64,000 nucleotides of DNA from Anthoceros angustus. Its lineage: Eukaryota; Plantae; Anthocerotophyta. Of the stretch, positions 27,717 through 50,212 are shown in pieces. The first letter of the stretch is position 1, and each line of letters opens with the position of its first letter. The stretch lies in the NCBI GenBank assembly GCA_010909165.1, contig MU008162.1, forward strand, positions 2,046,001-2,110,000, given 5' to 3'. The notes beneath the pieces were generated by a model that worked only from the letters and a program-made list of their open reading frames with translations, was not told the DNA's origin and made no database searches. Made by a program: the position numbers and the translations under genes.

Positions 27717-30700
27717 TCAGGACTCGGCTGACTTGAGCGTATCTGATGCAGTGGCTGCATCGGCTACCAATGCTGCAGGCACTCGGCCTTGAAGGCATGT
27801 GCCGATGTCGAACGGTGTAAGAAAAAGGCCATCGAAGATGAGGTTGACACCAGGCAGTGGGATATCCCCGCTCTCGTCCTCATCGACGAAGTTGGAGCTT
27901 ATACCTTTCATGCTTGGAGAAAGAGGGCCTGAGTCATCGAAAGCTCGAGATGGTGCTTCGAACAGGGTGCCCAGTGGTAGCAACCTGCACATGCCAAGCT
28001 TGCGAGTTTTAGGGTTTTTGTGGGTATGGGAAGTGCAAGAAAGAGTTGGGTCGGTGTAGGGGTTGGCGAACGTACTTTGGCAGTTCTCCAACAAAACTAG
28101 CCACTTCAGATCGTCGTCTTGCTCGGGTGGGTTGTTGCAGATCTGATGACGGTGTCAAAGTGGGTGTGAGAGGTGGCATACCGTCCAAGGGACTCCATTG
28201 TCCTGAGATGGAGGAAGAGGACGGGTGAGTCCCTCTTGCTCCATCGTAGGCAAGCTTGCACACGGAACCGCTAGGTTGATAGTTGGCCATGAACTCCAGT
28301 AACGCTTTTCTGAGCTTGTGCATGGCTTCTCCATGCTTGGTCAGGGAGTTAGGGTGGAAGAGATCAGCACGGACTACTCCTTCACATACTTGCTTACATA
28401 GCTCTGTGTTGAAGAGGGGTACCCCGAGCTCCACACTCTGAGGTACCCATTCCCAGGCATCACTATCTGCAGACATGTGAGATGCATCATGTTCTTGACC
28501 CGGTCTGTGGATTCGTATGAATCTGACGTATCCAACTGTTTGGAGATTGAGCTCCTCTGTGGCTTGTATGATTCGGGGATGTGGAGCAAAGGGTTCTACT
28601 CTCCGGTCCCCTTCTACACTGGAGGCGGACTGTGCTAAGGGTAAGGGGACATCCTTGGTTGCAGGACCTCCAGTTTCGGTGTTGGTGAGACATGTCCTCG
28701 GGAATGGCTGAATGAGTACTGCAGATTGCTTCAGAACTGCATTCAAGCAATGTAGCAGTATGTTTCCTTCCACCAAAGTGCCCTCAAATTTGCCTCCCAG
28801 TCCGGCAAGACCAGTGCCATCCCAGGACCATATTAGAGCCTTGGCACATCCCGCTAAGTAGGGTGGCAGTAACCTCAGTCGTTGGCCCCTTACAAGCACC
28901 ATGGACACAGGCCCCGACTGAGCCACAGAATACAGCAACAGCTTCATCCATGGAGACGAGGCAGCTTGGAATGGAGGACCAAAGTGTATAGGGCCTTCGC
29001 CATCTGCAGAGACTACTGAAGGAGGAGCTGGTAGAGGAACCATGGACACTACCACATTGTAGTCTCTTCTCAACACACGCTGTAGGGTGGCTGGGGGCAA
29101 ACCTGCTAAGCTTTCACAACGAATGACATCAACTTTGCAGTTACGAGCTTTCCTGTTTCGCTTCCCTGGGCCTGAAGCGGAGTCGGAGGATGAACTTGCT
29201 CCTGCATTCGTATCCATGTCCATAACATTTGTAGGATGTCTATCTTGAGCTCCATTCTTTGGAGCGATGTTGCCTGCTTCGTCCTCCATGTTTCCGTCTG
29301 TGCTAACGCCCCCTGATCGGATGCAATCCAACGCATGACGCAGGCTGAAAGCATGGACGGCCAATTCTTGCAACTCGCCTTCTAATTCTGTGCCCTCAAC
29401 TTTCCTCAGGTCCTCACACATGTCAGCTACACTGGAGTCTCCAAGCTTTCCAGCTTCGTACAGACTTACAGCATGTCCTTTCAAGCCTGGGAAACCATGC
29501 AAACTAAGATCAGAAAATGCGGACAACACATTGAGACTGCACTTTCGTCATCTTTCTATCTTTCTCACATACCTGGCGACAGTGAGCCCATCATGAGATA
29601 AGAGGTGAGGTTAGCATCCACCATCAGAGCAAATCTTGTTACCCCGCTAGGAGCCTTGGAGTCTCCAACAGCAGCGTCGGGTTGGAATACTCCAGGCACA
29701 ACTGAAGTGGGGCTTGCTGGATGTCGGAAGGCCCAACCTTCATCACCGGCCCCATTGCCATCACTAACTGTAGAACTCTCAGTTTCCTGAAGAAGAGAGG
29801 CAGGATCCAACACTTTTTTTGCCCACCCAAGGCGGCAAGCCAATGACACAGCAGATTCAAGCTGGCCGAGGTCTGCTTGTAATGTCGTTGCTAATTCTGC
29901 CACTGTGGCACGTTCGCTCGAAGCCACAAATACGGCATAGAGAAGTCTGCAGACAGTCATCAGATGCTCAGCAACAAAAACAAACTGGTGGGCTAGCTCA
30001 CACATGCCCATACACTAGTCAGCATGATGAATTATGATCTCACTCCTCTGTAGGGTCTTCGTAGGATTGATCCTTGTTTGAAACAAATCCTTCCAGAGCC
30101 GACACTGTCGTAACAAAGTGTGTGGAGCAATGAAAAATATTTGGTATTATACCAAGAAAAACTAATTAAATATTTTAAAGTTAGGAATTGAAAACCTTGA
30201 ATATGGTCATCTGGAAACACTGGTACATCCAAGTAGACAACACCCTTCCGAAAGAGACCACGCACCAAATCAATATCAAGTTCGCCAATTAGGTTTTTGG
30301 GGTTGTCTTTTGTTAGATAGTTGATCAATTGTATGTCTCTATCTGAAAATTTCTGTTCCGCTTAATAGTAAGTAATAATCTTTTAGATTGCATTACAAGC
30401 TTTTTAGAATTTGTATGCTCATTTAGATATTAGAGACAATGCTTACTTTCAAGTCCTCTTGAGTCATGTCCATGACTCCCACCGTCCACCAAGGTTCCAT
30501 TGCAAAATCTATAGGTTGTGTTGGGAGCATATCTTTCACAATAGCTTTGTTTATTTTCCACATGATTTTCTGTGGTAGATTGTTCAGTATAGACTACTAT
30601 AGCATCATTCAATCTGTCATTTATTGATGGATAAAAAATAAAAAATAGATTACCTTAGCTCTACACTTGTTCATGATATCTATAAACTCATTTCGACCAA

Positions 30701-34359: not shown

Positions 34360-36495
34360 TCATTTGTCATCTCCACAGGAACACAAACCATCCCTGAAAT
34401 GATGCACACGGTGGGCATCTCGAACAATAATTTCCCTCTTTTCAACCCTGGAAACTGTCTTGGAGCCGATATGGCAGTGATCGCACATTCTAAGATTCTT
34501 CACTATGAGCAGACTTGTGCCTGGAGGTGTGTTGAGGAGCCCAAATGCCAAGGCCAGCTTCTCAGCATGTCCACACAGGGCATCTTCCTTCTCATCCTCA
34601 GGAAGTGCTCCCAGCACAGGACTAACATGCCCTGTCCCCCGGGCCTGCAAAGTCAGACTTTTCAGCTTTGCAGATAGGTCCGCCCTCTTTTCTCCAACAA
34701 CGAATTCGTGCACCTTGTTGTCAACTTCTATGGCGGCCATTGCAGGCTTCTTCTGAATCCCTGCAGACCTTCTTAAGTGATTGATGTCCCTTTCATCTTC
34801 CCACCTTCCTGCATCCGCATACATTTCTGACATCAAAGTATAGGCAGCTGGGTGTTCGGGTTCAATCTGAAAAATGTGGTCAAAGCAGCGCCTTCCCATA
34901 TCAATGTTGCCATACACTTTGCATGCACTCAGCAAAGCCCTCCAACCAGCACTGTCATGTTCGGATGGCAAAGACTGCAACATGGTTTCTGCCTCTTCCA
35001 GTTTGCCTGATCGGCTGAGAACATCAACCATGCAAGTGTAGTGCTCTCCTATAGGTGTGATTCCATGCAAGTCCACCATCTCCTTGAAGTACTGCCGAGC
35101 CTCTTCCACTAGGCCCACATGACTGCAAGCAGCCAGGAGACAAGTAAAGGTTGCAGAGTCAGGCTCCACTCCCCTTTGTCGCATTTCCTCAAAACATTGC
35201 AAAGCCATGCCACATTTGTTATGCTGGCCATACCCTTTGATGAGAGCAGTCCATGACACAACATCCTTTTTTGTCAATCTGTCAAATACTGTGCGGCCTT
35301 CATCCACACTACCACACTTGACATACATGTCCACCAGTGCATTCCCGACTTTGGTCTCTGATTCCAGCTCCCTTTCCAGAATTTGGGCGTGGATTTGCTT
35401 GCCCTCTTTGATGGCCCCTATGCTACCACATGCTTTTAAGATGCCCACAAATGTTATGTCATTAGCAGGAGATGTGCCATCCTGCTCCATGCTTCTGTAG
35501 AGTTCAATGGCTTCCAGACCAAGACCCTGTTGGGCATATCCAGTGATCATGGCACTCCATGTCACAACATCTTTCTTGTTCAATCTATCAAACACAGAGC
35601 GCGCCTCCTCTAGACAACCACATTTGGAATACATGTCGACCAGGGCGTTTCCAATGAAGACATCTGATTCAAGCCTCCTTCTTTGGATCTGTGCATGGGC
35701 TAACTTTCCAACCTGTATGGCTGCCGTGCTGCCACAAGATTTCAAAACGCTAACAAAAGTATATTTATCTGGTGTCATGTCATACTGCTCCATGCTTGCA
35801 AATAACTGGAGGGCTTCTTGACCCAAACCATGATGGGAATAGCCCGCTATCATTGCATTCCAGGACACCATATCTCTAGTTGACAACCTGTCAAAGACTA
35901 CGCGAGCATCCTCCAGACTTCCACATTTACAGTACATGTCCACCAACGTATTGGCGACATATACATTAGATTCAAACCCACTGTCAATCACATCAGCATG
36001 AACCAGTCTGCCAGACTTCAAATCTGCTGCACTGGCACAAGCTTTGAGCACAGCAACATACACGAAGTCATCTGGCAGAACACTTGATTTCCGCAACTGC
36101 TGATACACTGTCACTGCCTGCTTTGGCTGCCCGTTTTCCGCATACGCTGAGATGATTGACGTCCAACAGAATGCATTTGGTTTAGGCAGTTTGCTGAAAA
36201 CTCGGGCCGCCTCCAGCAGATCCCCGTGGAAGCCATACATGCGTATGATGCGATTTGCCAGAATCATATTCAACTCATGCCCAGTGCTTACAGCAAGAGC
36301 ATGAACCCGCTTGCCAAGGACCAGATCCTTCTTTGCAATACACCCTTGCAGGAGACGATACAACATGTCCAAGCTGATGCAGCTTTCGTGATGTTCCATC
36401 TTGTCCACAACATGAAAGGCCTTCTGGAGCTCTCCCTCATCACATAGTCTGCTCCAGGCTTCAAATACGAAGACACCGCCGTCATGCGCTGCCAC
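34360..36495 (-). CDS. PLS-class PPR protein with E1-E2 and DYW:KP deaminase domain (candidate U-to-C organellar RNA editing factor)
   Basis: About 14 P/L/S repeats; KKPAMAAIEV in place of the PG box; GHAEKLALAFGL; NLRMCDHCH; ends CSCGDDK. The real start and transit peptide are probably upstream (~36685, MLAVSRRNV...) across apparent frameshifts. Confidence 0.93.
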   Translation of the reverse strand: MAAHDGGVFVFEAWSRLCDEGELQKAFHVVDKMEHHESCISLDMLYRLLQGCIAKKDLVLGKRVHALAVSTGHELNMILANRIIRMYGFHGDLLEAARVFSKLPKPNAFCWTSIISAYAENGQPKQAVTVYQQLRKSSVLPDDFVYVAVLKACASAADLKSGRLVHADVIDSGFESNVYVANTLVDMYCKCGSLEDARVVFDRLSTRDMVSWNAMIAGYSHHGLGQEALQLFASMEQYDMTPDKYTFVSVLKSCGSTAAIQVGKLAHAQIQRRRLESDVFIGNALVDMYSKCGCLEEARSVFDRLNKKDVVTWSAMITGYAQQGLGLEAIELYRSMEQDGTSPANDITFVGILKACGSIGAIKEGKQIHAQILERELESETKVGNALVDMYVKCGSVDEGRTVFDRLTKKDVVSWTALIKGYGQHNKCGMALQCFEEMRQRGVEPDSATFTCLLAACSHVGLVEEARQYFKEMVDLHGITPIGEHYTCMVDVLSRSGKLEEAETMLQSLPSEHDSAGWRALLSACKVYGNIDMGRRCFDHIFQIEPEHPAAYTLMSEMYADAGRWEDERDINHLRRSAGIQKKPAMAAIEVDNKVHEFVVGEKRADLSAKLKSLTLQARGTGHVSPVLGALPEDEKEDALCGHAEKLALAFGLLNTPPGTSLLIVKNLRMCDHCHIGSKTVSRVEKREIIVRDAHRVHHFRDGLCSCGDDK

Positions 36496-37353
36496 CCTGC
36501 CCCGTCCAGAGAATGGCCAGAAGTGTCATAACCAGGATGTCTGTAGTGCCCACCTGGTATCCATGCAAGCATCCAGAACTGAAATTGCAGACATAACAAG
36601 AGAGAGGCACAGTGCTAGACTTCCATAGCTTGGATAAATGTTGCAAAGTACCTGCCATGACGTTTCTCCGACTGACAGCTAGCATCTTGAGCCCAGCGGT
36701 GACCCCAAGAGTTCTGTGTGCAGGAGATTTCCATGCGTTAGTGCTCATCAGTCAAACAAGCGGCCAAGGGACCACTTAACTGCCCATCAGAAAGAGAGTA
36801 CCTTGTTGGGCAGCAGAAGTTTCCACCACGACTCTTGTGCAACTGACCCATCTGCAAGCCAGCTGGGACGTCAACAACCGAGACCCGAAACTCCAAAGCT
36901 GTTGAAATCGAATGCATCCACAGAGAAACATAAATGTACCGTGGCGTTTTTTTGTGCTCCCAAGACTGGACAGATGCCTGTACCAATCCTCCAGAGGGCT
37001 GTAAGGGCTTGGTCTACCTCGAACGATGCTGGACACAGAGGCATGTCCGCCGAACGCACGGATACGAGCACTCTTCATTCCGCTGGCCCAGTCTCAAGAC
37101 TTCCAAACCGTTTGGACAGTTAACCCTGACAGGCTTGCACACATCACAGGACACATGCCATCTGCCTGCGCGGGGAGAGGAATTCACGACCGCAATGGGA
37201 GCTACAACTCTTTCTCTTTCGGCTACACTGTTTTGTATGCTTGATTGCAAGGGTCCAGGTTCTGAGATATCTGACGCTGGGTTGTAGGAAGGATCAGCTG
37301 CCCAATAGCGGAGTTTGTGCTGGGTGGGCTACCTCTCAGGGGCGGCAGGCGCC

Positions 37354-40300
37354 ATGGATCCGAGAAAGTTAAAGCGAGAACTGCTTGACTTGGAGGCAGC
37401 CATGAAAGAGGACCAGGAGGCCCTGCAAATGATTGATCAGAGAGAGCACGCTATGAAGGAAAGGGAGGATGCTTTCCGGGAGCTGCAAGAGAGGGAGGCT
37501 GCGTTGAAGCAGAGGGAGGACGCTTTGCAAGAGTTGCGGCTGAGGGAAGAGGCTTTGAAACAGAGGGAAGACGCATTGCGGCAGCTTCGGGAAAGGGAGG
37601 AGGCTCTGAAGCAGAGGGAGGATGCCGCGCTCGTTGAATTGCGACGTAGGGAGGCGGCTGTGAAACAAAGGGAGGAGGAATTAATGGGCAGAGGAGCAAC
37701 AACAGCAAGCCGAGAAAGAGGTCGGGCTGTCCCTGAGTTCGTGCCTCAGCACATAGCCTTGTCTCCTCCTCCTTCTGCCAGTTCCTTTGGACAGGATAGT
37801 GGCTATGAAAGGATCTCTGAAGACAGGTACCGGATTCGATTATGTTGGAATATGCAGTGGTAGAGGTCTTTGTTCTGCACCCATGTTATCTATTGGTTGC
37901 TCTCTGCCACCACAGAGAGAGCATGGAGAGTGAGGAGGACTACAACTATGCCTCTGAGAGACCAGACATGGAGGAGGAGGAATACACATCTGCTGATGGC
38001 AGTGATGAGGATTTTGATGAGGAAACCATGTACGACAACAACTCTGGAGGCGATGACTTTGAAACAGACGCCCCAACCTCACCTGATGGTGAAGAGTCTG
38101 AAGAATTGGAGGAGGAATCTCGGAAACCTCTTACAGCAGCACAGAGAAGATGGAGGAGGGCCTACTTCTTGATAAGGAAGCATCTGGTAGGCTACATTGT
38201 CGTTTCTGCATCTTCCACAGCTTCCATGATTCAGGTTCCACAGCCTCCCTACATTTGCAGGCTATTACAAAACATGGCATGCGTACTACGATTGGCACAG
38301 GAGCAGAAATGGAGGGTTTTGCTCTAGGCTTTGTGCCAGCGAAACATCCTGTGCGGATGAAAGTCTTTGCTTTCTTGTATCACCAGTATCCACACCCGGC
38401 AGTGGGGGTTTATTTTTGGCGCGTACATGTTTAGCTTCTCGGGACTTCGGAGGGTCTACTCTCCTTTACCTCTTATCTGCAGACGCACTGAGTACTGTCT
38501 GGCTTTTCTCATATGCGCACACCTCATAATACTGGTTATGAAGGCACAAGTGGAGGATATTGGGATGAAGCCTAACAGATCAGCATTAGACCTTGCAGAT
38601 GCTGTGGTGACCTTTTTGTACACGTATGGTCTTCTCGCCATCTTGGCCATTGGCTTGCTTAGTTACTGTGATGAAAAAGGTTGGCTGAGCATACTGAACC
38701 CAACTGTTTCAGCGTTGAGATGCTTCTGCGTATTCTGTGCTTGGGCTTTGCTCGGGGTGAGCACACGTTTCTCAAGAACAGCTACAACAAGCTTGATTTT
38801 GTCATCGTCTTCGACTCCTGGTAAGCTTGTGTACTGCTTAGTTGCTCACATTTGATTTCCAACAGGTGATATTATTAACATTATAATTTCAATACCTTTC
38901 CTGTGTTTGATGAGGTGTGAGGCTGCTAAGTCTAGTCTCTCTTGTGTGACTCGTAGGATACATCTTCTAGTCAAACTTATTACCAAGAAGGACACTTTTG
39001 CCCGAATTGCAGTATTTCGTGCTTTCCGAGTCTTGCCGATTCTGCGGTCATTCTCTTTCTTTGGAAATCTCTTAGTATGTGGTCAATGTTGCTATCTTAT
39101 GCAGTCGTTTTCTACCCTCACAACTCCTGCACAGCAAAAGAGACTTGATTCCACATATTGCTTGTATTTCAGGCAATATTAGAAGCCAGCAGGCGTTGCA
39201 TTGCTCCACTCAATAATGTTATCATCCTCACATTCTTCATTCTCTCCTTTTATGGCCTCGTGGGTGTTCAAACCTTTGGAGGGTCCCTAAGCCGCAGGTA
39301 GAATGTCACAACTTGCTCTTATGCTTCATGCTCAAGATCTTGGTCAGTAAGAATGGTGTCTTCATAATAGCAAAGGGGAAAGTCTGTACGTCTGTTAGAA
39401 GTTTTGCGTCATGTATGTAAGGTAATGAGACTCGTTCCAAAGACCACCTCCTTGTCTTCATGAAAACCATCCGTACTTTGTCCTTCTCAAACTTGATTTC
39501 ACAGGTGTGTAAGTTTTTATCCCTTATCCAACACCACTTTCCAAGAGCAGTTTCCTGAAAAATCCTGCGGAATCGGAAAGGGTTATCAGTGTCCTGATCA
39601 ACAAGTCTGCGAGGTGACCCAGGATCTTCCGTCCTTGCATTCAATATGCCTCTGTTTGATGTACATAAACGAAATCATCATGCCCAAGCAGTTTCATTGA
39701 ATTATTATTACTCATATATGAATCATAGTTTCTGGAAAATCCAAACTGGGGAGCAATGAACTTCGATAGTTTTCCGTATGCCATTTTGACGATGTTCCAA
39801 GTATGGAGTTTTGAAAATTCATAAGTTAACTGGAAAGAAATAAAAGAATATGCAAATTGGATATAATATAATTAATTTCTTATGTATTAAATAACAGGTT
39901 ATAACTTTTGCTGGTTGGAGTACTATTATGTATTCCGTGGAGGATGCAGAATCTCAAGCATCATGTGTATATCTGTGTATTCTATATATATTATTAAATA
40001 TATTTAAATATAAATATTTAATAATTTTTAATTGCAGCTGTATATTTCATCACTTTATGTGTGTTTTGGAAGCTATTTTCTAGTTAGTGTTTTCGTAGCA
40101 GCAATAAGCGGTGTTTTTCTAAGAGTTCAAGAGAGCACCGGTTACATGTATTGATTGAAATAAATTTAATTATGGATTTATTTTAAATATAATTTATATA
40201 AATAGACAGTATTTTCATTCCAATCAGATTCTTATAAAAAGACATCGGCAAGTTACACAATCCTCTCTTCACAGCTCTAAAGTGATGGAAAAGGTTTACA

Positions 40301-43300
40301 AGGAAATAGGATATGATGCTAGTGAAAGACCTTCTTGGCAAGGGCAACTACATAGGAAATCAATCAACGTCGTGAAAACAGCACATCGACGGACATTGAA
40401 GATATTCCGATCTTTTTCAGTTGTAGTGCTTGGTCGAAGAAAAATAAGTTTTGCAAATAATGTTCAAACATCTTTACCGTTGGGACCCTTCTCAATTAGC
40501 TACACTGTGGCTGACAGAGCCAAAGCTTTAGTGCTCGGTCCTACTTTCATATATGGCGCTCAGATTATGATAACTATGAATGTGTGTATACTTTGTTTAT
40601 ATCACGAAGGAATGTCTGATGAGTTTCATGATTTGTTATGTATCCATAAAAGTTTTTTTCATGTTAAATGTAGACAAGATGGAAGTTTTTACTAACACTG
40701 TGAGTTCCTTAATAACAAAAGATGTTTTGGAAGCAATAATGCTTTTAGCCTTTATCATAGAAATGTGCTTACGGTTCATTGCAGCGGGATTGAAGGAGTT
40801 TGTTGATGATGGTATTCTACTATTTATTTGATAAGTTTGTTTAAAATTGTGTTATTATTTCTAGAATCATACCCTTAATGTTTCACACTAATATTTTGTT
40901 CCAGGTATGAATATATTTGACGTTATTATAATTGTATTATCGTGTGTTTCACTAGCAACTCGTTTGTACCCAAATATCTCAGCAATTAGAGCTTTGCGTT
41001 GGTTCTACAGACCTGGAAAGACCGATGTTACAAACCGATCTATCATGGTTTGCAACTCCAGTTCCTTTTCATTAGGTTGCTAATGAGAAGAATGAACGAT
41101 ATAAGTTCAATCAATCATAGAGGCTCTACAAGCTCTATAAAGTGTCATCCTTGGAATGCATATGTATCAAACAAACAAAAAAACATCGGAATGAAATAAT
41201 ATTTCTTCAATAATAAATATATGATATTTATGAGCTCCTCCACTTACTTAAGCTTTGTTGCGCAGACCGATTGTATTAGAAGTTTGGGAGCGTTGTCCAG
41301 CTTGATATTCTTCTATTGCCTGATCATTTTTATATATGCCATTATTAGTATGGAACTTTGGGGTGGTGAGTTTTATAATTTTGATGACGGTTATCCAAGA
41401 CAAAACTATGATACTATATTTAGAGCAATGCTCTCTTGGTTCATAATTACCACAGCAGAGAGTTGGCCATGGACTATGGGTAATTCAATGCGACCTGGAG
41501 TAAGGAATAAGTAAATGACACAACATAGATATAATACGTTAACTATCAAATAATTATATTGATGCAAGGATTATCACACTATGTGTTTGCCAATCTTTTT
41601 TGTCATCCAAATACAAGACCCATATCCTTTGCAGATGGACAGCACCAATTCTGTTTGTGTTCTACTTCGGATTCACAGTATATGTAATTCTCAATTTGAT
41701 CATAGCAATTATATTAGAAAAGAGTGAGATGACAGATCGCCAGAAAAAACATATACAAAAGGTTTGACTATGAAACCTAGTCTGGTGTACTTATCATTCT
41801 TACTTTGAGGTTTTACAGGTCTTATTTCCTATAGGCCAGATAACCAGTTCTAATTCTAGCACTCTCGTTTAGGAAAGTTAAATATATTATATCTTTTGTT
41901 CATCTTAAAACTTACTATTACCTCAAATAACCAAATAAAACTCTACCACTCTTGGCAGACCGAACACTTGAAAGCCTTGCGGAAGAAACAAGCGCAATCG
42001 TGCTACACAAATAGACGAGGCAGCTGGTTTGTAGATGCAATGTCCACTGCTCACGCTGGTGTGAAGGGCATAGCAAGGAAAATAAATTCATCAATGAGGG
42101 TGAGCCAGATTTACATCCCAGGACGTTTATCTATGCTGGCCTATCGTGGGCGAAAAGGCCGAGCAGACACCAGGAATCCCGACTCTGGCAATGGGCTTGC
42201 TGGCGAAACCTCGCAAACATCCATGCCTTCATCTTCGTTGAACGATCACACCCATCATGCCCATGGTCTACCACATCATGCTAATTTACGCCGTCGTTCC
42301 ACCCAGCGAGGATATCAGCTGCTTCACCAAACAGGCTTCCGAGGCAGCTTAGGGAGGGAAGGAAGTATAAGGCCTACTGCATTGGAGAGCTCAGTGTTGG
42401 CCTTGATGGAGGAGCAAGAATCTGGCTACAAGCCAGAGCCTAGTGGTACACTCCAATCCTCTGGGGATATGGCAGGGTCTGGTGATGACAGAAGTAGAAC
42501 TCGGACTTCTTTTCGTCTTGCTGACTTCGAGGAATTCGAAAGCACAAGTGCTCGAACCAAGGCCCCCTGGTACATCACGGATTCAGCTCTGTTTCTATTC
42601 GGGAGTGAGAACAAATTTCGAGTTGTTTGTCAGAGGCTCATGGATAGCAAATGGTATAGAAGATTCATATTCTTTATGGTCTTCGTGAGCATTGTAGCAA
42701 CGGTTGAAACCAACCCCCAGGGAAAGCCAATTGTGGCTCCGATTATCATTGACAGCGCCAACAAGGCTGTCTTAGTGGTTAGTGCTTCTCTGGGACGGCG
42801 GTGTACATGCTATCAGTATGCTTGAGGGTCGAAGCAACATGTAAGTATCCCTTTGCCTTGCAGGTGTTTGGACTGGACATAGTCTGCAAAAGCGTAAGCT
42901 ATGGGTTCCTGCTGACTCCGGATGCCTATCTGGGAGATGCCTATAATTTTTTGGATCTGTTCAACTTTGTAGTTGATCTCTTAGCAACTCTGCCTGGCTG
43001 GTCTCAGTACTGGCTGAGAGTCCTGCGGATGCTTGTTGCCTTCCGACCTACAAGGCTTATTGTCCGAATTTCTGGTCTTCGGGATCTTGTTACATCCTTG
43101 CTTTTCACTGTTCCAGCCATCGCATCGACTCTGGCTTTTAGTCTGACTATATTTGCCATATTTGCAACAATAGGACTACAGCTCTTCAGGGGCCGGTTCA
43201 ATGCTTGCAATGACGACTCAGTCAGTAATCGCCTTGAATGTGTGGGCGTGTTTGAGAATTCATCAGGTAAGACTCTGGCACAAGTTAAGCTGGTTTGCAT

Positions 43301-45577
43301 CCCAGCTCTGATCCATCATTCTTGAAGCCTCGGGGCAGCACTCAGCTCATTGTTTTGTTGGCTGATACTGTGACTCACGCTGTAATTGTATCAGGAGTCC
43401 TTGCACCTCGTCTTTGGGAGACGCCTACTTATCATTTTGATGACATTGGCAATGCCATGCTGTCTCTTTATGTTTGCTCGACATTCGACAACTGGGTCTC
43501 CTATTTTTTGAATACAGCCATGGATATCCCCTCAGATCCAAATGACCAGCCAAGAAGAAACCACAGCTCTTTAAATGCCCTGTTTTTTGTGGCATTTGTC
43601 TTCATAGGGGGACACTTCGTTGTGCGTATGTTTGTCGGAGTGTTTGTGGATCAGTTTGGGATTGTGTCAGGCTCTAAGCTACTGACTGAGCGACAGAAGC
43701 TCTGGAGAGACAACAACCGGATAATTCAGAGGCTTTCACCAACTCGCATGCCAACTAAGCCTCGTGGAAAGCTCCGAAGTGTATGTTTTAGGATTGCTCA
43801 TTCAGTGGGTTTTGGACGGCTGATTGTGCTCCTGGTTGTCGCTAATTTCGTCTGCCTAGCCAGCCAGACATTTCATACAAACATAACACCCAGGGTTTCA
43901 GCAGTGGAGCACAGATTTATTCAAGTTGATGCAGCGTTTGTGTTTGTGTTTTCCATGGAACTTGCAATCAAGCTACTTGGCTCTAAGGTAAGGCTTGTTC
44001 TCTGTTTCCTCAGATTGGTGCTACACGGACAGGTTTACTTCCTCCTAACACGTTGCACCTGCTTTGGTATGACGGTGGGCAGTTCCATGACTGGTGTGTA
44101 AACTTCTGGAACTTCTATGAAGGGATCATAGTTATCGGTTCAGCATTTTGCATCTTTCCTGCTAGAGGAACCACCAGGCTCAAAGTGGGGCGTGTGTTTT
44201 TTCTCGTCCGAATATTTCGGATCATCCGATACATCCCTCCACTCCACGCACTGGTCCAGACTGTGTTTGTGAGTTTGCCTTCAATGGTCCACATCATAAG
44301 TCTGCTCTTGATTATTCTTTTCGAGTTTGCTGGAGTCGGAGTCCAGATGTTCTCCCATGTCACGGATGGAGCTTGCATCGGTCCCCACATGAATTTCAGG
44401 ACATTCGTGAATGCATTTGTGGTTGTGTTCCAGGTTCGATCTCTCATCCTGCCTAACAACTCATCTTCTTGCTCTAATATTCTACCTCGAAGCCAGATGT
44501 GACGACCTTGGTGCCTGCCAGTGTCCCGTCACTCCTAACAAACCATTTGCTGCCAGGTTGCCACAGCTGATAACTGGTCTTGCATTATGAACGATTGTCG
44601 AGTACAGTACCCGTCATGTGCCAAGAGCAGTAATCTGACTCAAGACGAATGCGGTTTCTCAGCAGGAGCTCTCGTCTACTTTATTTTCCTGGTGGCCTCA
44701 ACTACATGGATCTGCACAAACTTGTTTGTAGCTGAGATCCTGGATACCATCACCTTTGGATTATTGAATGAAGAAGCCATGATCACTCCCAGCCATCTGC
44801 TCGACTTTCAGACGCTGTGGGCCCACAGTGAATTCGACCCGAAGTATGATTTCCACCAAACATTGGGTCTTGCATCTGCCCTGTCAGTGCTGGGTATCCA
44901 TCCATTCTTGTATGCCATCTTCTCGGGGCTCCCTGTGCAGGAGGAAGGGGTTCATTGGGCTTCACAAACTTCGAACTTTCTTGAATTGCCTGGGCCTGCC
45001 CTTGGGCCGAAGGCCAAATGCTCCTGCCAAGTGGTAAGATTCATGTCACCTTATCATCCTCCGTTCAAACCTGATTCAGTATGGATGCTCAGAAATGCTT
45101 CCTGGTATCAGGTATACAAGGATCGAGTACGAGGTCATGAGTTTTCACCAACGGGGCAAGGGCGTTCCATTCAAGCAGTTGCTGGAAACACTCACCCTGT
45201 ACAAGATCGGGGCACAGGTATTGACAATTGCAAATGCAGTAATCCTAAAGCCACATTAACCGAAACACAAGCTTGTTAGAATACTATGAGGGGCTGGCAA
45301 ATAAATGCAGGGCCTGGAGCTTGCCTTGCGGATAGAAAGGGAGAAACAGATACAGCATGTGTACAGGCACGGAGCTGCCACGAAAATTCAAGCAGCGATC
45401 AGAGGGTTCATCGTGAGGGCCAGGTTGAAGAAGTTGGAGGAGACCAACGCGGAAATCGATCCTGCAGCCTTGGATGCTGGACAAAAATTAGATCCGGATT
45501 CTGAGTTCACTTTCAGGATAAAGAACATGTTGGATCTCAAACTGGAGATTTTCATGCTCAAGACATTGTGGTTCTAA
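37354..45577 (+). CDS. Four-domain voltage-gated cation channel alpha subunit (Cav/Nav superfamily), multi-exon
   Basis: Four S1-S6 repeats with S4 segments (FRAFRVLPILR; AIRALRWFYR; LRVLRMLVAFRPTRLIVR; KVGRVFFLVRIFRIIR). Four pore loops (FQ|VITFAGW, FIITTAESW, YVCSTFDNW, FQ|VATADNW). DIII-IV linker LLTERQKLW, EF-like C-terminus FQTLWAHSEFDPK and IQ motif IQAAIRGFIVR. GT-AG introns. Confidence 0.93.
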
Positions 45578-45729
45578 CTTCTAAGCTCTTTCAGGTTCTC
45601 CATGAAGTCGCTTGCTTGTACAAGTCAAGACTGTCCCTCTTACAACTTCTTCATTCACCAGCGTGCCGAAGAAACCCACCAGCTTAGATACTCAAGGCAG
45701 ACTTGGGCATATCCACATCCCTGAGTGCT

Positions 45730-46362
45730 ATGGCGTCTGCCCAGTTGCTTCCCGGACGAACCCTGCATAGCCCTGGGCTAGTCCTGCGTCGGCTGCCTTC
45801 TATTCCTCGGTTACGTCCGGTGGCTGGACGGTTTAGGCGTCTTGAGGGACCCAGCACAGTCTTCGTGAAGGCCTGCAGCGATGCCGGGAATCCGTCTTCC
45901 AGCGCTGTTCCGGGGCCGGGATTTGAGGACCCCAACAAGGAGGTTGCGACACCCGCCTGGAAGAGGTGGCAGAGCAATGCAGCGGACATGAGGGCGCAGG
46001 TGGCCAAGCTTGGCCTGGCTGCGGTGCTAGCTTACGGCCTCTTCGATGGTGTCACCTACACCACCTTCTTCTTCCTGGCCTTCCTGGGCTACGAGAAGAG
46101 CACTGGGAACAACCCGGCTGCCAACATCCAGGCCCTGCTCGGGATCGTCATCACCATGTGGGCCGGCAACAATGTGACCAGACCCTTCCGGGTGGCTGGA
46201 GCAGCTGCCATTGCTCCAGTTGTTGACAGGTTCTTGAAGAAAGTGCAGAAGGTGCTGAAGCTGCCGAACCAAGCCTTCGCTTTCATGCTGGTGGTGGCTT
46301 CTTTCGCCTTCCTCTGCTTCTCGCTGGTTGGCCTTCTAATCCTGTCACGTTGGGGAAGATGA
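45730..46362 (+). CDS. Single-exon putative plastid-targeted membrane protein (DUF1279/FAM210-like)
   Basis: Arg/Ser-rich transit-like N-terminus followed by conserved-looking LGLAAVLAYGLFDGVTY...WAGNNVTRPFRVAGAAAIAP and a hydrophobic C-terminus. Confidence 0.75.
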   Translation: MASAQLLPGRTLHSPGLVLRRLPSIPRLRPVAGRFRRLEGPSTVFVKACSDAGNPSSSAVPGPGFEDPNKEVATPAWKRWQSNAADMRAQVAKLGLAAVLAYGLFDGVTYTTFFFLAFLGYEKSTGNNPAANIQALLGIVITMWAGNNVTRPFRVAGAAAIAPVVDRFLKKVQKVLKLPNQAFAFMLVVASFAFLCFSLVGLLILSRWGR

Positions 46363-46940: not shown

Positions 46941-49209
46941 CTACGATTCGGGATCTGCTCTTCCACCAAACAGCTTTACGCAGGATGTCGGTGTCAACTG
47001 CTCCACACACGCAGGGCAGTCTTCCCTCACACTTCTAAAAGAGAAGTAGGCAAAAAGTTCCTCAGGAAGGCCCTCTTCGTCAGCGGATAGGGAGCCCTGG
47101 GATTCAGAAACTTCTATGTGAAGCCTCTGCCGGCCAAGTTGCTTGAGCATGTGCCCTGCTGCAAACGCCGGTGAACCTTCCACCCAGAAATACTTCAAAT
47201 CCGGCCCTGCTTGAGAGAAGGCCTTGGCCACACCCTCAGCAGTGAAGGGACAATGCCGGAACTCGAGCCGTCTAAGACTGCGGCACCCCCGAAGCAGATC
47301 CTTCAACCCATCGTCGTCGTCCCCAGCGCAAACCAGACATATCCATTTCAGCGTCGACCCACCATTCTCCCCGATATGCCGCAGCCCAACATTTGTCAAA
47401 CTGCCTGCCCTCATCGCCAGCGCCAGCTTAGTGAGCGCCCTACACCTTTGCATAATGTACAGAATGCCCTCGTCTATGGGAACAAGCTGCGAGTGGTCCA
47501 CCTTCTGGACTATGATCAACCGCAAGTCGTTCAACTTCCTGCAGTTCTCCCCCAAAGCCTTCAACGCATCATTGGACAACTTCGCAGCATAAACAGTGAG
47601 AAACTCCAGCTCGGAGCACCCTCTAGCCAACGCTGTTATCCCCTCCTGCGTGACCTCGTTCTCAGCATCCTCATCCACGTCCAACCTCTCCACCCTAAGC
47701 TTCTTCAACGACTTGCAATGCGCAGCAATCACCCGAAGCCCAGCATCCCCAATCATAGGCCTCACCTGGAGAGCAAGAAACAACAACCACATCCTGTCAG
47801 CCAAACTCCAAGGCACCACACCACATCACCATCCTCCACATCCTTCCTCACCTCAAGCGCCTCCAGGTGCTTGCAATGCGCAATGAGCTCCATCACACTC
47901 TCCCGACTGAGATCAGCCAACTTCAAGTCCAGGTTCCTGAGCGTCCCACTCAACGGCAGCAGCATGGGCAGATGAACATCCGCAGCATCGTACAACCCGG
48001 ACAGCGACACTAGCCTGTCAGGCAACAGCCGCCCAAACCTCCCGGCCTCATCTTCTGGAAACAACCCCGTCCCAAGCTCCCTTAGCGCAGGAGCCCTAGC
48101 CAAAACCTCCCAACACGCATCCTGCTGCTTCCACACCCCCAACCTCAAGCTCCTCAACCCACGGCAAGACCGAACAAGCACCCCCAAGTCCTCCATCTCC
48201 GGCCCCTTCGCGTCCGGTTCTTCATCATCCCCAACCCCTTCTGGGTCAGGATCCGGCAGCAGCAGCTCCTCCAAACGCGGGTTGTTTCCCGCCAGCACTT
48301 TGAGCCAGTCCCCCCGCATATCGTCCATCCGGCTGCTGGCCATGTCCAGCGTCCTGAGCGACCTGCCATGCATCCGCCACTCCAGCCCCCGTCACCCACA
48401 GCACCAACTCCGAGCGACCCAATTTACCCAATTCCAACCCAATTACGAGCAACCCAAGTCCTAGCAACCCATTTCCAACCCAACTCCGAGCAACCCAAAC
48501 AACGAGCAACCCAGCTCCACACAACCCAAATCCTAGCAACCCATTTCCAAGCCAACTCCCGGCAACGCAATTCCCGAGCAACCCAACTCCGAGCAACACA
48601 TTTCCAATCCAACTCCGAGGAACCCAAGTCCAAGCACCCCAATTTCCGCCATCCCTCGACTCGACCTGATTGAAGCCTACCTGCAGGAGTGGGCGAGCAT
48701 GAGGAGGCCGTGCGCGGAGAAGCCATCGCACTTGTCCAGCACGAGGCGCTGGAGGGCGCGGCCGCATCCGGCCGCGAGGGTCTCCAAATCCGCGTCGTTC
48801 ACGACTGCCCGCTTGAGGTAGAGCGACTCGAGGGCGGGGTACTTGGCGGCGATCGCGCAGATCCAGTCCCGGCGCGGCCGCCCCAGTCGGCGGCCAGCTG
48901 CTGGAACTCCATGGCGCGCGGACGGCACTTGAGCTTGATGCGCTTGAGGCTGTGGAACCTGCGGGTGAGCCGGTCCGGGTACGCGGCGTAGCAGTTGGCC
49001 ACCGTGACCTCGGCCCGCATCCGGCCGTCCACGAAGCACCAGCGCGAGCAAACCTCCGAGGCCGCGTGCAGCGCCTGCACGTCCGATTCCAAGTACCGGA
49101 AAATGGACTCCAGCAGCGGCCCGCGCAGCACCTCGTCCATGGCCCCCTCGCCCTCCTCGGCCTCGTCGCCCTGCGGCAGGGAGAGCAGCATCCGCTTGGA
49201 GCTGGCCAT
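46941..49209 (-). CDS. COI1-like (TIR1/COI1 family) F-box/LRR protein; 3 exons (49209-48681, 48362-47852, 47765-46941) with one 1-bp frameshift at ~48869
   Basis: F-box LLESIFRYL..ASEVCSRW; TVANCYA; LKCRPRAMEF..WGG; LVLDKCDGFS; LRVER; DLRL; LEFRHC; YFWVEG; ELFAYFSF..REDCP. Intron positions match the family. Confidence 0.88.
48385..48640. repeat. Imperfect tandem repeat inside intron 1 of the COI1-like gene
   Basis: Recurring gagcaaccca / ctagcaacccatttccaa / caactccgag units. Confidence 0.8.
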
Positions 49210-50212
49210 GGCGGCTGAGGGCCGCGGCTGGGGGCCCCAACCAACTCGCACCATCATCTCCTTCCACACCTGTTCCTGTTTCACATCGGCATCACACCTC
49301 CTCTGCTGCTGGCAGCTGGACCCTGGAGCCTGGGGCCTGGAGCCTGGGGCCTGGAGCCCGAGCCCGAGCCGCCCAGGCCAGGGAGGGAGGAAGGAAGGAA
49401 TGAAGGCTGGAGGAAGGAAGGAAGGAAGGAAGGAAAGGAGCAACCGGCGTTGCAGAAGATGCGGACAGCCGCAGGCTCGGGACGCCGCACATGCATCGTC
49501 GTCTACTGTGTTCATGTTTTATAATAATCTAACAAGCGTCAGGCGATGTCGGACAACTCTGTTCACCTCACGCTGTTGATAATGCTCGCAAAAGGCCTTG
49601 TCGTTGGCTTAACGACCGAGCCTGTGACGGGAGCTTCCCCGGCCAATCCGCTCTGACTCTTACGCTGGCCTGCTTCGCTAATATGGCCGGCTTCTCTATT
49701 AGCGGAGACGTTGATGGGTTGATGGGTTGATGGGCATGATATGGCAGACTCCTGTCGTCGTTGTTTGGAAGTTTTGGGGCTCGCCGTTTTCCCGTTGCGT
49801 GACACAGCGGGGCCGGGGGCGGGCTCGCTGTCCGAAGTTGAAGAACGGAGTTGTGTTGGTGTTGCGTGAGACCGTGGTCCACGTATGTCGGTTGTTTTGT
49901 TGTATGTCGGGGACCTACACTTGTATAGAAATCCTTTGGCTTTTTTTATGGAGTTCTAGAACACGGACGCGCGAAGACAAAAAGACACTAGTGAGATCAT
50001 AAACAAAGGGCGCTGTACTCTGCTGCTGCAGCAACACAGCAACACAGCAACGCAGGCGACCAAGTTGGTTCCTGACGATTTGGAAACAACCTAATCAACA
50101 AAGATTCCAAAGGTGTATGGTATGGTATATCCATTACACATCCGGTTCTTGAGAAAAGTTTTTTTCCCTCTCTACAAAATGGAATACTATATTCATGTAT
50201 ATTTTCGTCCAC

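What the first reader, a model, noticed from the sequence alone, without database searches (positions are those of the whole stretch)
37354..45577. Apparently intact four-domain voltage-gated channel in a land plant
Seen: four S1-S6 repeats, pore loops, a Nav/Cav-like DIII-IV linker, an EF-like C-terminus and an IQ motif across spliceable exons. Established: four-domain Cav-type channels occur in green algae such as Chlamydomonas and are absent from angiosperms. Inference: the gene was retained in a lineage with flagellated sperm and may act in sperm motility or chemotaxis, or in action potentials.
Basis: partly seen in the sequence, partly recalled or inferred. Interest (0 to 1): 0.85.

Follow-up and report, generated by a model that had tools for sequence, protein, structure and literature searches.

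The report
Four-domain channel in swimming-sperm plants
This probable hornwort has a conserved gene for a four-domain ion channel, the kind animals use in nerves and that land plants are widely said to lack; named relatives turned up only in plants with swimming sperm, and the channel looks closer to the NALCN/Cch1 leak and calcium-uptake channels than to classical voltage-gated calcium channels.

Summary
Window 37354-45577 (+) is a 24-exon, about 1,880-residue four-domain channel gene with an EF-like tail and IQ motif. It is transcribed and spliced in the same sample and under purifying selection against a related species' copy, whose 24 exons are all open. Exon 11 carries three one-base indels in an AT-rich stretch, probably assembly errors; shifted splice sites also bypass them.

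Orthologues occur in Marchantia (Mp2g23520), Riccia, Selaginella, Diphasiastrum and Ginkgo; no named angiosperm appeared. With marine green picoalgae they form their own clade. Trees reject grouping with Cav3 or the sampled chlorophyte channels; a model matches NALCN best. The pore reads A/E/D/D (other land plants mostly E/E/D/D), and the domain II voltage sensor is charge-poor.

Most likely it is a calmodulin-regulated, weakly voltage-dependent Ca2+-permeable channel of flagellated sperm; this is inferred, not shown. A moss candidate and the flagellum link were noted in 2016, but reviews still call these channels absent from land plants. This scan noted the A/E/D/D filter on this same stretch, and a Mid1/FAM155-like gene elsewhere in this genome (unchecked by me).

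The parts
37354..38186 (+). Exons 1-2 (37354-37826, 37916-38186): N-terminal repeat-rich coiled-coil-like segment and acidic stretch
   Evidence: Open frames; junction 37826/37916 spliced in RNA run X2; similar repeats in L001 but only 35% identical; not seen in Selaginella or Diphasiastrum N-termini
38261..40140 (+). Domain I, exons 3-11; S4 in exon 6 (38957-39074), four-cysteine extracellular loop in exons 7-8, pore helix in exons 9-10, S6 in exon 11
   Evidence: tblastn; Pfam pieces; junctions after exons 2, 3, 4, 5 seen in RNA contigs of related organisms
39910..39912 (+). Domain I filter position: Ala (Ser in L001, Glu in the other land plants)
   Evidence: no other letter listed here in DNA run X1
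40038..40140 (+). Exon 11 (DI S6): one extra base in the T-run at 40064-40067 and two missing bases near 40127 and 40138 relative to L001
   Evidence: a stop-free in-frame route with donors at 39967 and 40148 and acceptor before 40206 needs no sequence change
40228..41761 (+). DI-II linker and domain II, exons 12-16; charge-poor S4 in exon 14 (40905-41047); filter Glu at 41458-41460
39700..41900 (.). AT-rich segment (introns 12-33% GC) where DNA contigs break and differ from the window, and where no RNA contig lies
41959..42777 (+). Exon 17: long DII-III cytoplasmic linker, DIII S1 and start of S2
   Evidence: RNA contigs of X2 and X19 begin at 41992 and 41984
42778..42863 (+). Intron 17, unspliced in the listed contigs of all three RNA runs; read-in gives a stop after 15 codons
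42864..43987 (+). Domain III core, exons 18-19; filter Asp at 43487-43489; DIII-IV linker without IFM; DIV S1-S2
   Evidence: junction 43266/43395 spliced in X2, X19, X23 but not in DNA run X1
44083..44843 (+). Domain IV, exons 20-21; S4 in exon 20; filter Asp at 44569-44571; S6 and start of the C-terminal domain
44941..45577 (+). Exons 22-24: EF-like C-terminal domain, IQ motif at about 45374-45430, stop at 45575-45577
   Evidence: same stop position in L001

Best explanation
A single polypeptide folds into a pseudo-tetrameric 4 x 6TM cation channel of a green-lineage family that lies outside the Cav/Nav group, on the NALCN/Cch1 side of the tree. Shown: gene structure, conservation, transcription, family placement. 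Inferred from known channels: the lysine-free acidic filter (A/E/D/D here) passes Ca2+ with modest selectivity; the thinned S4 charges (two in regular spacing in DII, a gap in DI, DIII and DIV) make gating weakly or slowly voltage-dependent; calmodulin on the IQ helix gives Ca2+ feedback. Inferred from distribution and sparse expression data: the full-length channel is made mainly in the male germ line and admits Ca2+ in the flagellar membrane to tune beat or steering towards the egg. Speculative: it works with a Mid1/FAM155-like subunit, and vegetative transcripts stay unproductive through retained introns.
For: Purifying selection: pS about 0.72, pN 0.11-0.24 outside the N-terminus, dN/dS about 0.1 where computable. 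Clade of land plants plus marine green picoalgae at 100 support; those algal contigs carry CEP104 and nuclear MinE beside the channel. Foldseek top six hits for a DIII-DIV-tail model of the Diphasiastrum orthologue are NALCN, TM 0.79-0.81 against at most 0.74 for Cav/Nav. NALCN is the only solved channel matched out to profile position 716 of 721. Linker and S4 patterns resemble NALCN. Named orthologues are all from plants with motile sperm. Mp2g23520 is near zero in wild-type thallus (0-0.01 TPM) and rises in a line that ectopically turns on germ-line genes (PMC13190419 supplement 8). A Marchantia Slo K+ channel is highest in male tissue (10.1101/2021.06.01.446568).
Against: No localisation, knockout or current recording exists for any member. 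RNA from runs of unrecorded tissue covers both ends of the gene, so it is not silent outside known sperm samples. The Marchantia signal is low and one of 584 up-regulated genes. Sequence scores rank Cav1/Cav2 above NALCN, VIA Z-scores do not single out NALCN, and an exclusive clade with NALCN/Cch1 is weakly rejected (p 0.023). Absence from angiosperms rests on named hits only. An earlier unchecked note reports a broken SPEF2 flagellar gene copy in this genome.
Confidence: 0.55

Rival explanations
1. A classical steeply voltage-gated Ca2+ channel, the functional equivalent of Chlamydomonas flagellar CAV2, driving Ca2+ action potentials in sperm flagella.
For: Acidic filter; DIII and DIV S4 keep four to five positive charges; best sequence scores to Cav; CAV2 is flagellar (PMC8318260).
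Against: Rejected as one clade with the sampled core-chlorophyte channels and Cav3; DII S4 has two regular charges and DI lacks the filter glutamate. CAV2 itself was not in the tree.
Confidence: 0.17
2. A somatic channel: Cch1-like Ca2+ uptake under stress, or the trigger of thallus action potentials, with the link to sperm being coincidental.
For: RNA contigs at depth in three runs with no sign of being sperm samples; several paralogues in Selaginella; kinship to the Cch1 side.
Against: Those RNA contigs keep introns, use a frame-shifting donor at 39047 and skip exons 9-16; Marchantia wild-type thallus has almost no transcript; no named hit in plants without flagella.
Confidence: 0.17
3. A recently disabled copy: the exon 11 indels are real and this accession makes no full channel.
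For: Three indels against L001; no RNA contig over exon 11; X1 contigs only lack letters relative to the window, so they do not visibly supply the two missing bases.
Against: All three lie in 103 of 5,648 coding bases (chance about 3e-4) between introns of 12% and 17% GC; the window has 34 surplus letters against short-read contigs, apparently in this AT-rich part; no other exon is damaged; an in-frame bypass exists.
Confidence: 0.1
4. Algal or fungal contamination or recent horizontal transfer.
For: The family is common in algae, fungi and protists.
Against: Land-plant neighbours, one DNA contig running from the upstream region into the gene, same exon phases in L001, nesting among land plants.
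Confidence: 0.01

Closest known systems
Marchantia Mp2g23520 (Mapoly0069s0001), Selaginella XP_024521493 and paralogues, Diphasiastrum O6H91_02G023500, Ginkgo Gb_09885
   Same: Orthologues: colinear, shared intron positions where checked, one clade; already auto-annotated as ion-transport or Cav/Nav-like.
   Different: They keep E/E/D/D; this gene has A/E/D/D and an N-terminal repeat segment. I found no paper that studies any of them.
Physcomitrella Nav/Cav candidate of Brunet and Arendt 2016 (PMC4685582, Fig. 6 legend)
   Same: Four-domain channel candidate in a bryophyte, loss linked to loss of flagella.
   Different: A mutual-best-BLAST remark without gene model, tree or filter analysis; they found none in seed plants, whereas a partial Ginkgo model turns up here.
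NALCN (animals) and Cch1 (fungi)
   Same: Best structural match, similar DIII-IV linker and C-terminal domain, reduced S4 charge, same side of the deepest split.
   Different: No lysine in the filter (NALCN E/E/K/E); S4 of DIII and DIV far more charged; not an exclusive clade with them (p 0.023).
Cav3 (T-type) channels
   Same: E/E/D/D filter in most land-plant members.
   Different: Clade with Cav3 rejected, so the filter is convergent; marine relatives have E/E/D/E; an IQ motif is present.
Chlamydomonas CAV2 and other core-chlorophyte four-domain channels
   Same: Architecture, green lineage, proposed flagellar role.
   Different: Sampled Tetradesmus and Myrmecia channels fall in a different clade; CAV2 has E/E/E/E (PMC5824947) and was not tested directly.

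Membership tests
Four-domain voltage-gated-like cation channels (FVCC superfamily) | Four Ion_trans repeats in one reading frame | tested here: met
   frame continuity depends on exon 11; fully open in L001
Four-domain voltage-gated-like cation channels (FVCC superfamily) | Four pore loops with a filter residue before a conserved Trp; EF-like tail and IQ | tested here: met
Cav1/Cav2 (HVA) | E/E/E/E filter and four charge-rich S4 | tested here: not met
   A/E/D/D; DII S4 with two regular charges
Cav1/Cav2 (HVA) | AID motif for Cav-beta in the DI-II linker | not tested
   no specific motif search was run
Cav3 (T-type) | E/E/D/D filter | tested here: inconclusive
   met by lycophyte and Marchantia members, not by this gene
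Cav3 (T-type) | One clade with Cav3 | tested here: not met
   AU p 1e-6, LG+G4, 24 rows
Nav | Lysine in the filter and IFM inactivation motif | tested here: not met
NALCN/Cch1 | One clade with NALCN and Cch1 | tested here: inconclusive
   sister at 95 in FastTree; unresolved neighbour in the mixture tree; exclusive clade weakly rejected, p 0.023
NALCN/Cch1 | Charge-poor S4 segments | tested here: inconclusive
   DII poor, DI NALCN-like, DIII and DIV fairly rich
NALCN/Cch1 | Obligate Mid1/FAM155 subunit and leak-type gating | not testable with these tools
   only an unchecked note of a Mid1/FAM155-like gene in this genome
Chlamydomonas CAV2 orthologues | Orthology to CAV2 and flagellar location | not tested
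   CAV2 was not identified among fetched proteins; other core-chlorophyte channels were excluded as sisters

The most novel reading that the evidence does not exclude
Non-flowering land plants and Ginkgo kept a complete NALCN/Cch1-type channel complex, this pore subunit plus a Mid1/FAM155-like partner, as the Ca2+ entry route of swimming sperm. Its production would be gated by a held-back intron at the same position in hornworts and liverworts, and hornworts retuned the pore by dropping the domain I glutamate.
Probability: 0.3. Interest if true: 0.88.

Novelty: new variant of a known kind. Interest (0 to 1): 0.72.

Why it matters
Papers from 2014 to 2024 state that land plants lack four-domain channels (PMC4030171, PMC5824947, PMC8318260, PMC11085791). 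A conserved orthologue group from bryophytes to Ginkgo moves the loss from the move onto land to the loss of flagella. Ca2+ signalling in plant sperm chemotaxis is described as largely unexplored, with moss GLR the one channel named (10.1101/2025.04.26.650577). Mp2g23520 was the only copy found in Marchantia, a species with routine gene editing, so the question can be tested directly. A green relative of NALCN/Cch1 would also bear on how old that complex is.

Tried and rejected
The joined protein was not built or searched; trees used separate exon pieces and full-length relatives. Exact look-ups of two window proteins, meant to fetch the short-read contig over exon 11, found nothing. Read laying listed only the best-supported indels, so X1's gap positions are unknown; only 37300-43299 was laid. 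The AU test under the mixture model did not finish, so the reported tests use LG+G4 on 24 rows. NCBIfam gave nothing. No main text names Mp2g23520, Mapoly0069s0001 or VICSPER; six supplement searches were blank or irrelevant. From memory and unverified: meeting abstracts have used the name MpVICSPER for Marchantia sperm channels, and I cannot say if this gene is among them. P0020 could not be traced. TPC hits are explained by folding only two domains. Unnamed members (P0002, P0007, P0010, P0192, P0261-P0263) could not be assigned to taxa, so mosses, ferns and charophytes are untested. The hornwort assignment is inference from contig totals near 100 Mb, compact genes and tree position.

Full report
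Observation. The finding's coordinates are the exact start and stop of a plus-strand gene. I defined 24 exons (5,648 coding bases). All introns are GT-AG, 73-218 bases long, phases agree, and 23 exons have no stop. Selaginella, Marchantia, Diphasiastrum and Ginkgo proteins align in order along the gene. Pfam finds Ion_trans in all four repeats and an IQ motif above cut-off. Exon 19 alone hits solved Cav, Nav and NALCN channels at E 1e-11 to 1e-23. The upstream neighbour is a PPR-DYW gene, which fits a land plant.

Is it intact? Exon 11 has one extra and two missing bases against locus L001, a related species' contig. In L001 all 24 exons are open with the same phases, about 1,854 residues. Synonymous sites are near saturation while non-synonymous change is low, also in the AT-rich exons (pN 0.20, dN/dS 0.11), so the gene has been under constraint. 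The indels cluster between two very AT-rich introns; such clustering has a chance of about 3e-4 if spread over the coding sequence. Short-read contigs of the same sample label lack 34 letters that the window has. RNA run X2 matches the window without gaps wherever it lies, which points to the AT-rich part as the site of those differences. The tool did not list their positions, so the error reading is likely, not proven. Independently, shifted canonical splice sites give a stop-free route that keeps the S6 core. I put an open frame at about 0.85-0.9.

Expression. Runs X2 (same sample), X19 and X23 (related organisms) show spliced joints at predicted introns 1-5 and 18 between them, none of which appear in DNA run X1. 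The same contigs also keep several introns, use an out-of-frame donor at 39047, keep intron 17, and leave 39740-41980 uncovered. Contigs show presence only, and the tissue is unrecorded. Still, no full-length productive transcript was seen. In Marchantia the short isoform Mp2g23520.2 ends 14 residues past the last residue it shares with the full-length form, at the identical intron position. In PMC13190419 supplement 8 the gene is at 0-0.01 TPM in wild-type thalli and at 0.34 (full) and 1.19 (short) TPM in a male line that up-regulates MpBNB, MpGLID, MpDUO1 and MpPKAR. This is weak, indirect support for germ-line expression.

Relatives. An HMMER search with exon 19 and two searches with full-length relatives returned Marchantia, two Riccia species, several Selaginella paralogues, Diphasiastrum and a partial Ginkgo model, and no named angiosperm or conifer. 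Window exons 18 and 19 fall in this land-plant clade, exon 19 next to the L001 protein. Its sister is a set of marine sequences whose contigs carry CEP104 and a green-type nuclear MinE, so probably flagellated green picoalgae. The joint clade has 100 support in all three trees. It lies outside a strongly supported group of Cav1, Cav3, Nav and the sampled core-chlorophyte channels, near NALCN/Cch1 and some protists. AU tests reject union with Tetradesmus/Myrmecia and with Cav3, and weakly reject an exclusive clade with NALCN/Cch1. It is best called a lineage of its own on that side. Deep branches here are short and long-branch effects are possible.

Anatomy and mechanism. The filter is A/E/D/D; L001 has Ser in domain I, so loss of that glutamate is a lineage trait rather than a misread. 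Other named land plants have E/E/D/D where all four sites are present, and the marine sisters E/E/D/E. Lysine-free acidic filters are Ca2+-selective or non-selective in characterised channels (PMC5824947), so Ca2+ permeability with reduced selectivity is the reasonable inference. S4 of domain II keeps two regularly spaced arginines across the land-plant clade, domain I follows the NALCN-like pattern, and domains III and IV keep four to five charges. The DIII-IV linker lacks IFM and lines up with the NALCN-type row without gaps. A model of the Diphasiastrum DIII-DIV-tail (pLDDT 80.5) matches NALCN best by Foldseek. VIA gives NALCN the longest alignments but not the top Z, and sequence scores favour Cav. 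Extracellular cysteines are conserved but are shared widely.

What is known. Several papers say embryophytes lack these channels. Brunet and Arendt 2016 did report a Physcomitrella candidate and tied loss to loss of flagella, and databases already label the Marchantia and Selaginella genes as voltage-gated channel-like. So existence in a bryophyte is not wholly new. I found no published gene-level, phylogenetic or functional study in the library searched. New here are the breadth up to Ginkgo, the placement away from Cav, the A/E/D/D pore and the shared unspliced intron.

Verdict. Real, conserved and probably intact; a new variant of a known kind. The sperm-flagellum Ca2+ channel reading is the most likely (0.55) but rests on distribution and thin expression data.

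Noticed in passing
window 42778-42863: Intron 17 is unspliced in contigs of three RNA runs, and the commoner Marchantia isoform ends inside the intron at the same position; a possible conserved held-back intron.
   Followed up: partly
window 39740-41980: No RNA contig from any of three runs covers exons 9-16, and two runs restart at 41984-41992; could be dropout, filtering, or separate 5' and 3' transcripts with an internal start after the AT-rich intron 16.
   Followed up: partly
window 39047: An alternative donor 28 bases upstream of the exon 6 end is used in X19 and X23 and would shift the frame.
   Followed up: no
window 34360-36495 (-): Intronless PLS-class PPR gene with E and DYW domains, head to head with the channel; one X2 RNA contig spans from inside it to the end of channel exon 1.
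   Followed up: partly
window 45703-46362 (+): A 219-aa ORF with a transit-peptide-like start and hydrophobic C-terminal half begins about 125 bases after the channel stop; no Pfam hit.
   Followed up: no
window 46941-49244 (-): F-box/LRR gene resembling COI1/TIR1 by eye, in several ORFs; only weak LRR hits were obtained.
   Followed up: partly
L002 7179-9749; L003 13716-16331: In marine green picoalgal contigs the orthologous channel sits directly beside the ciliary-tip gene CEP104.
   Followed up: no
window 28009-29529 (-): 506-aa ORF with a FAM91 C-terminal domain.
   Followed up: no
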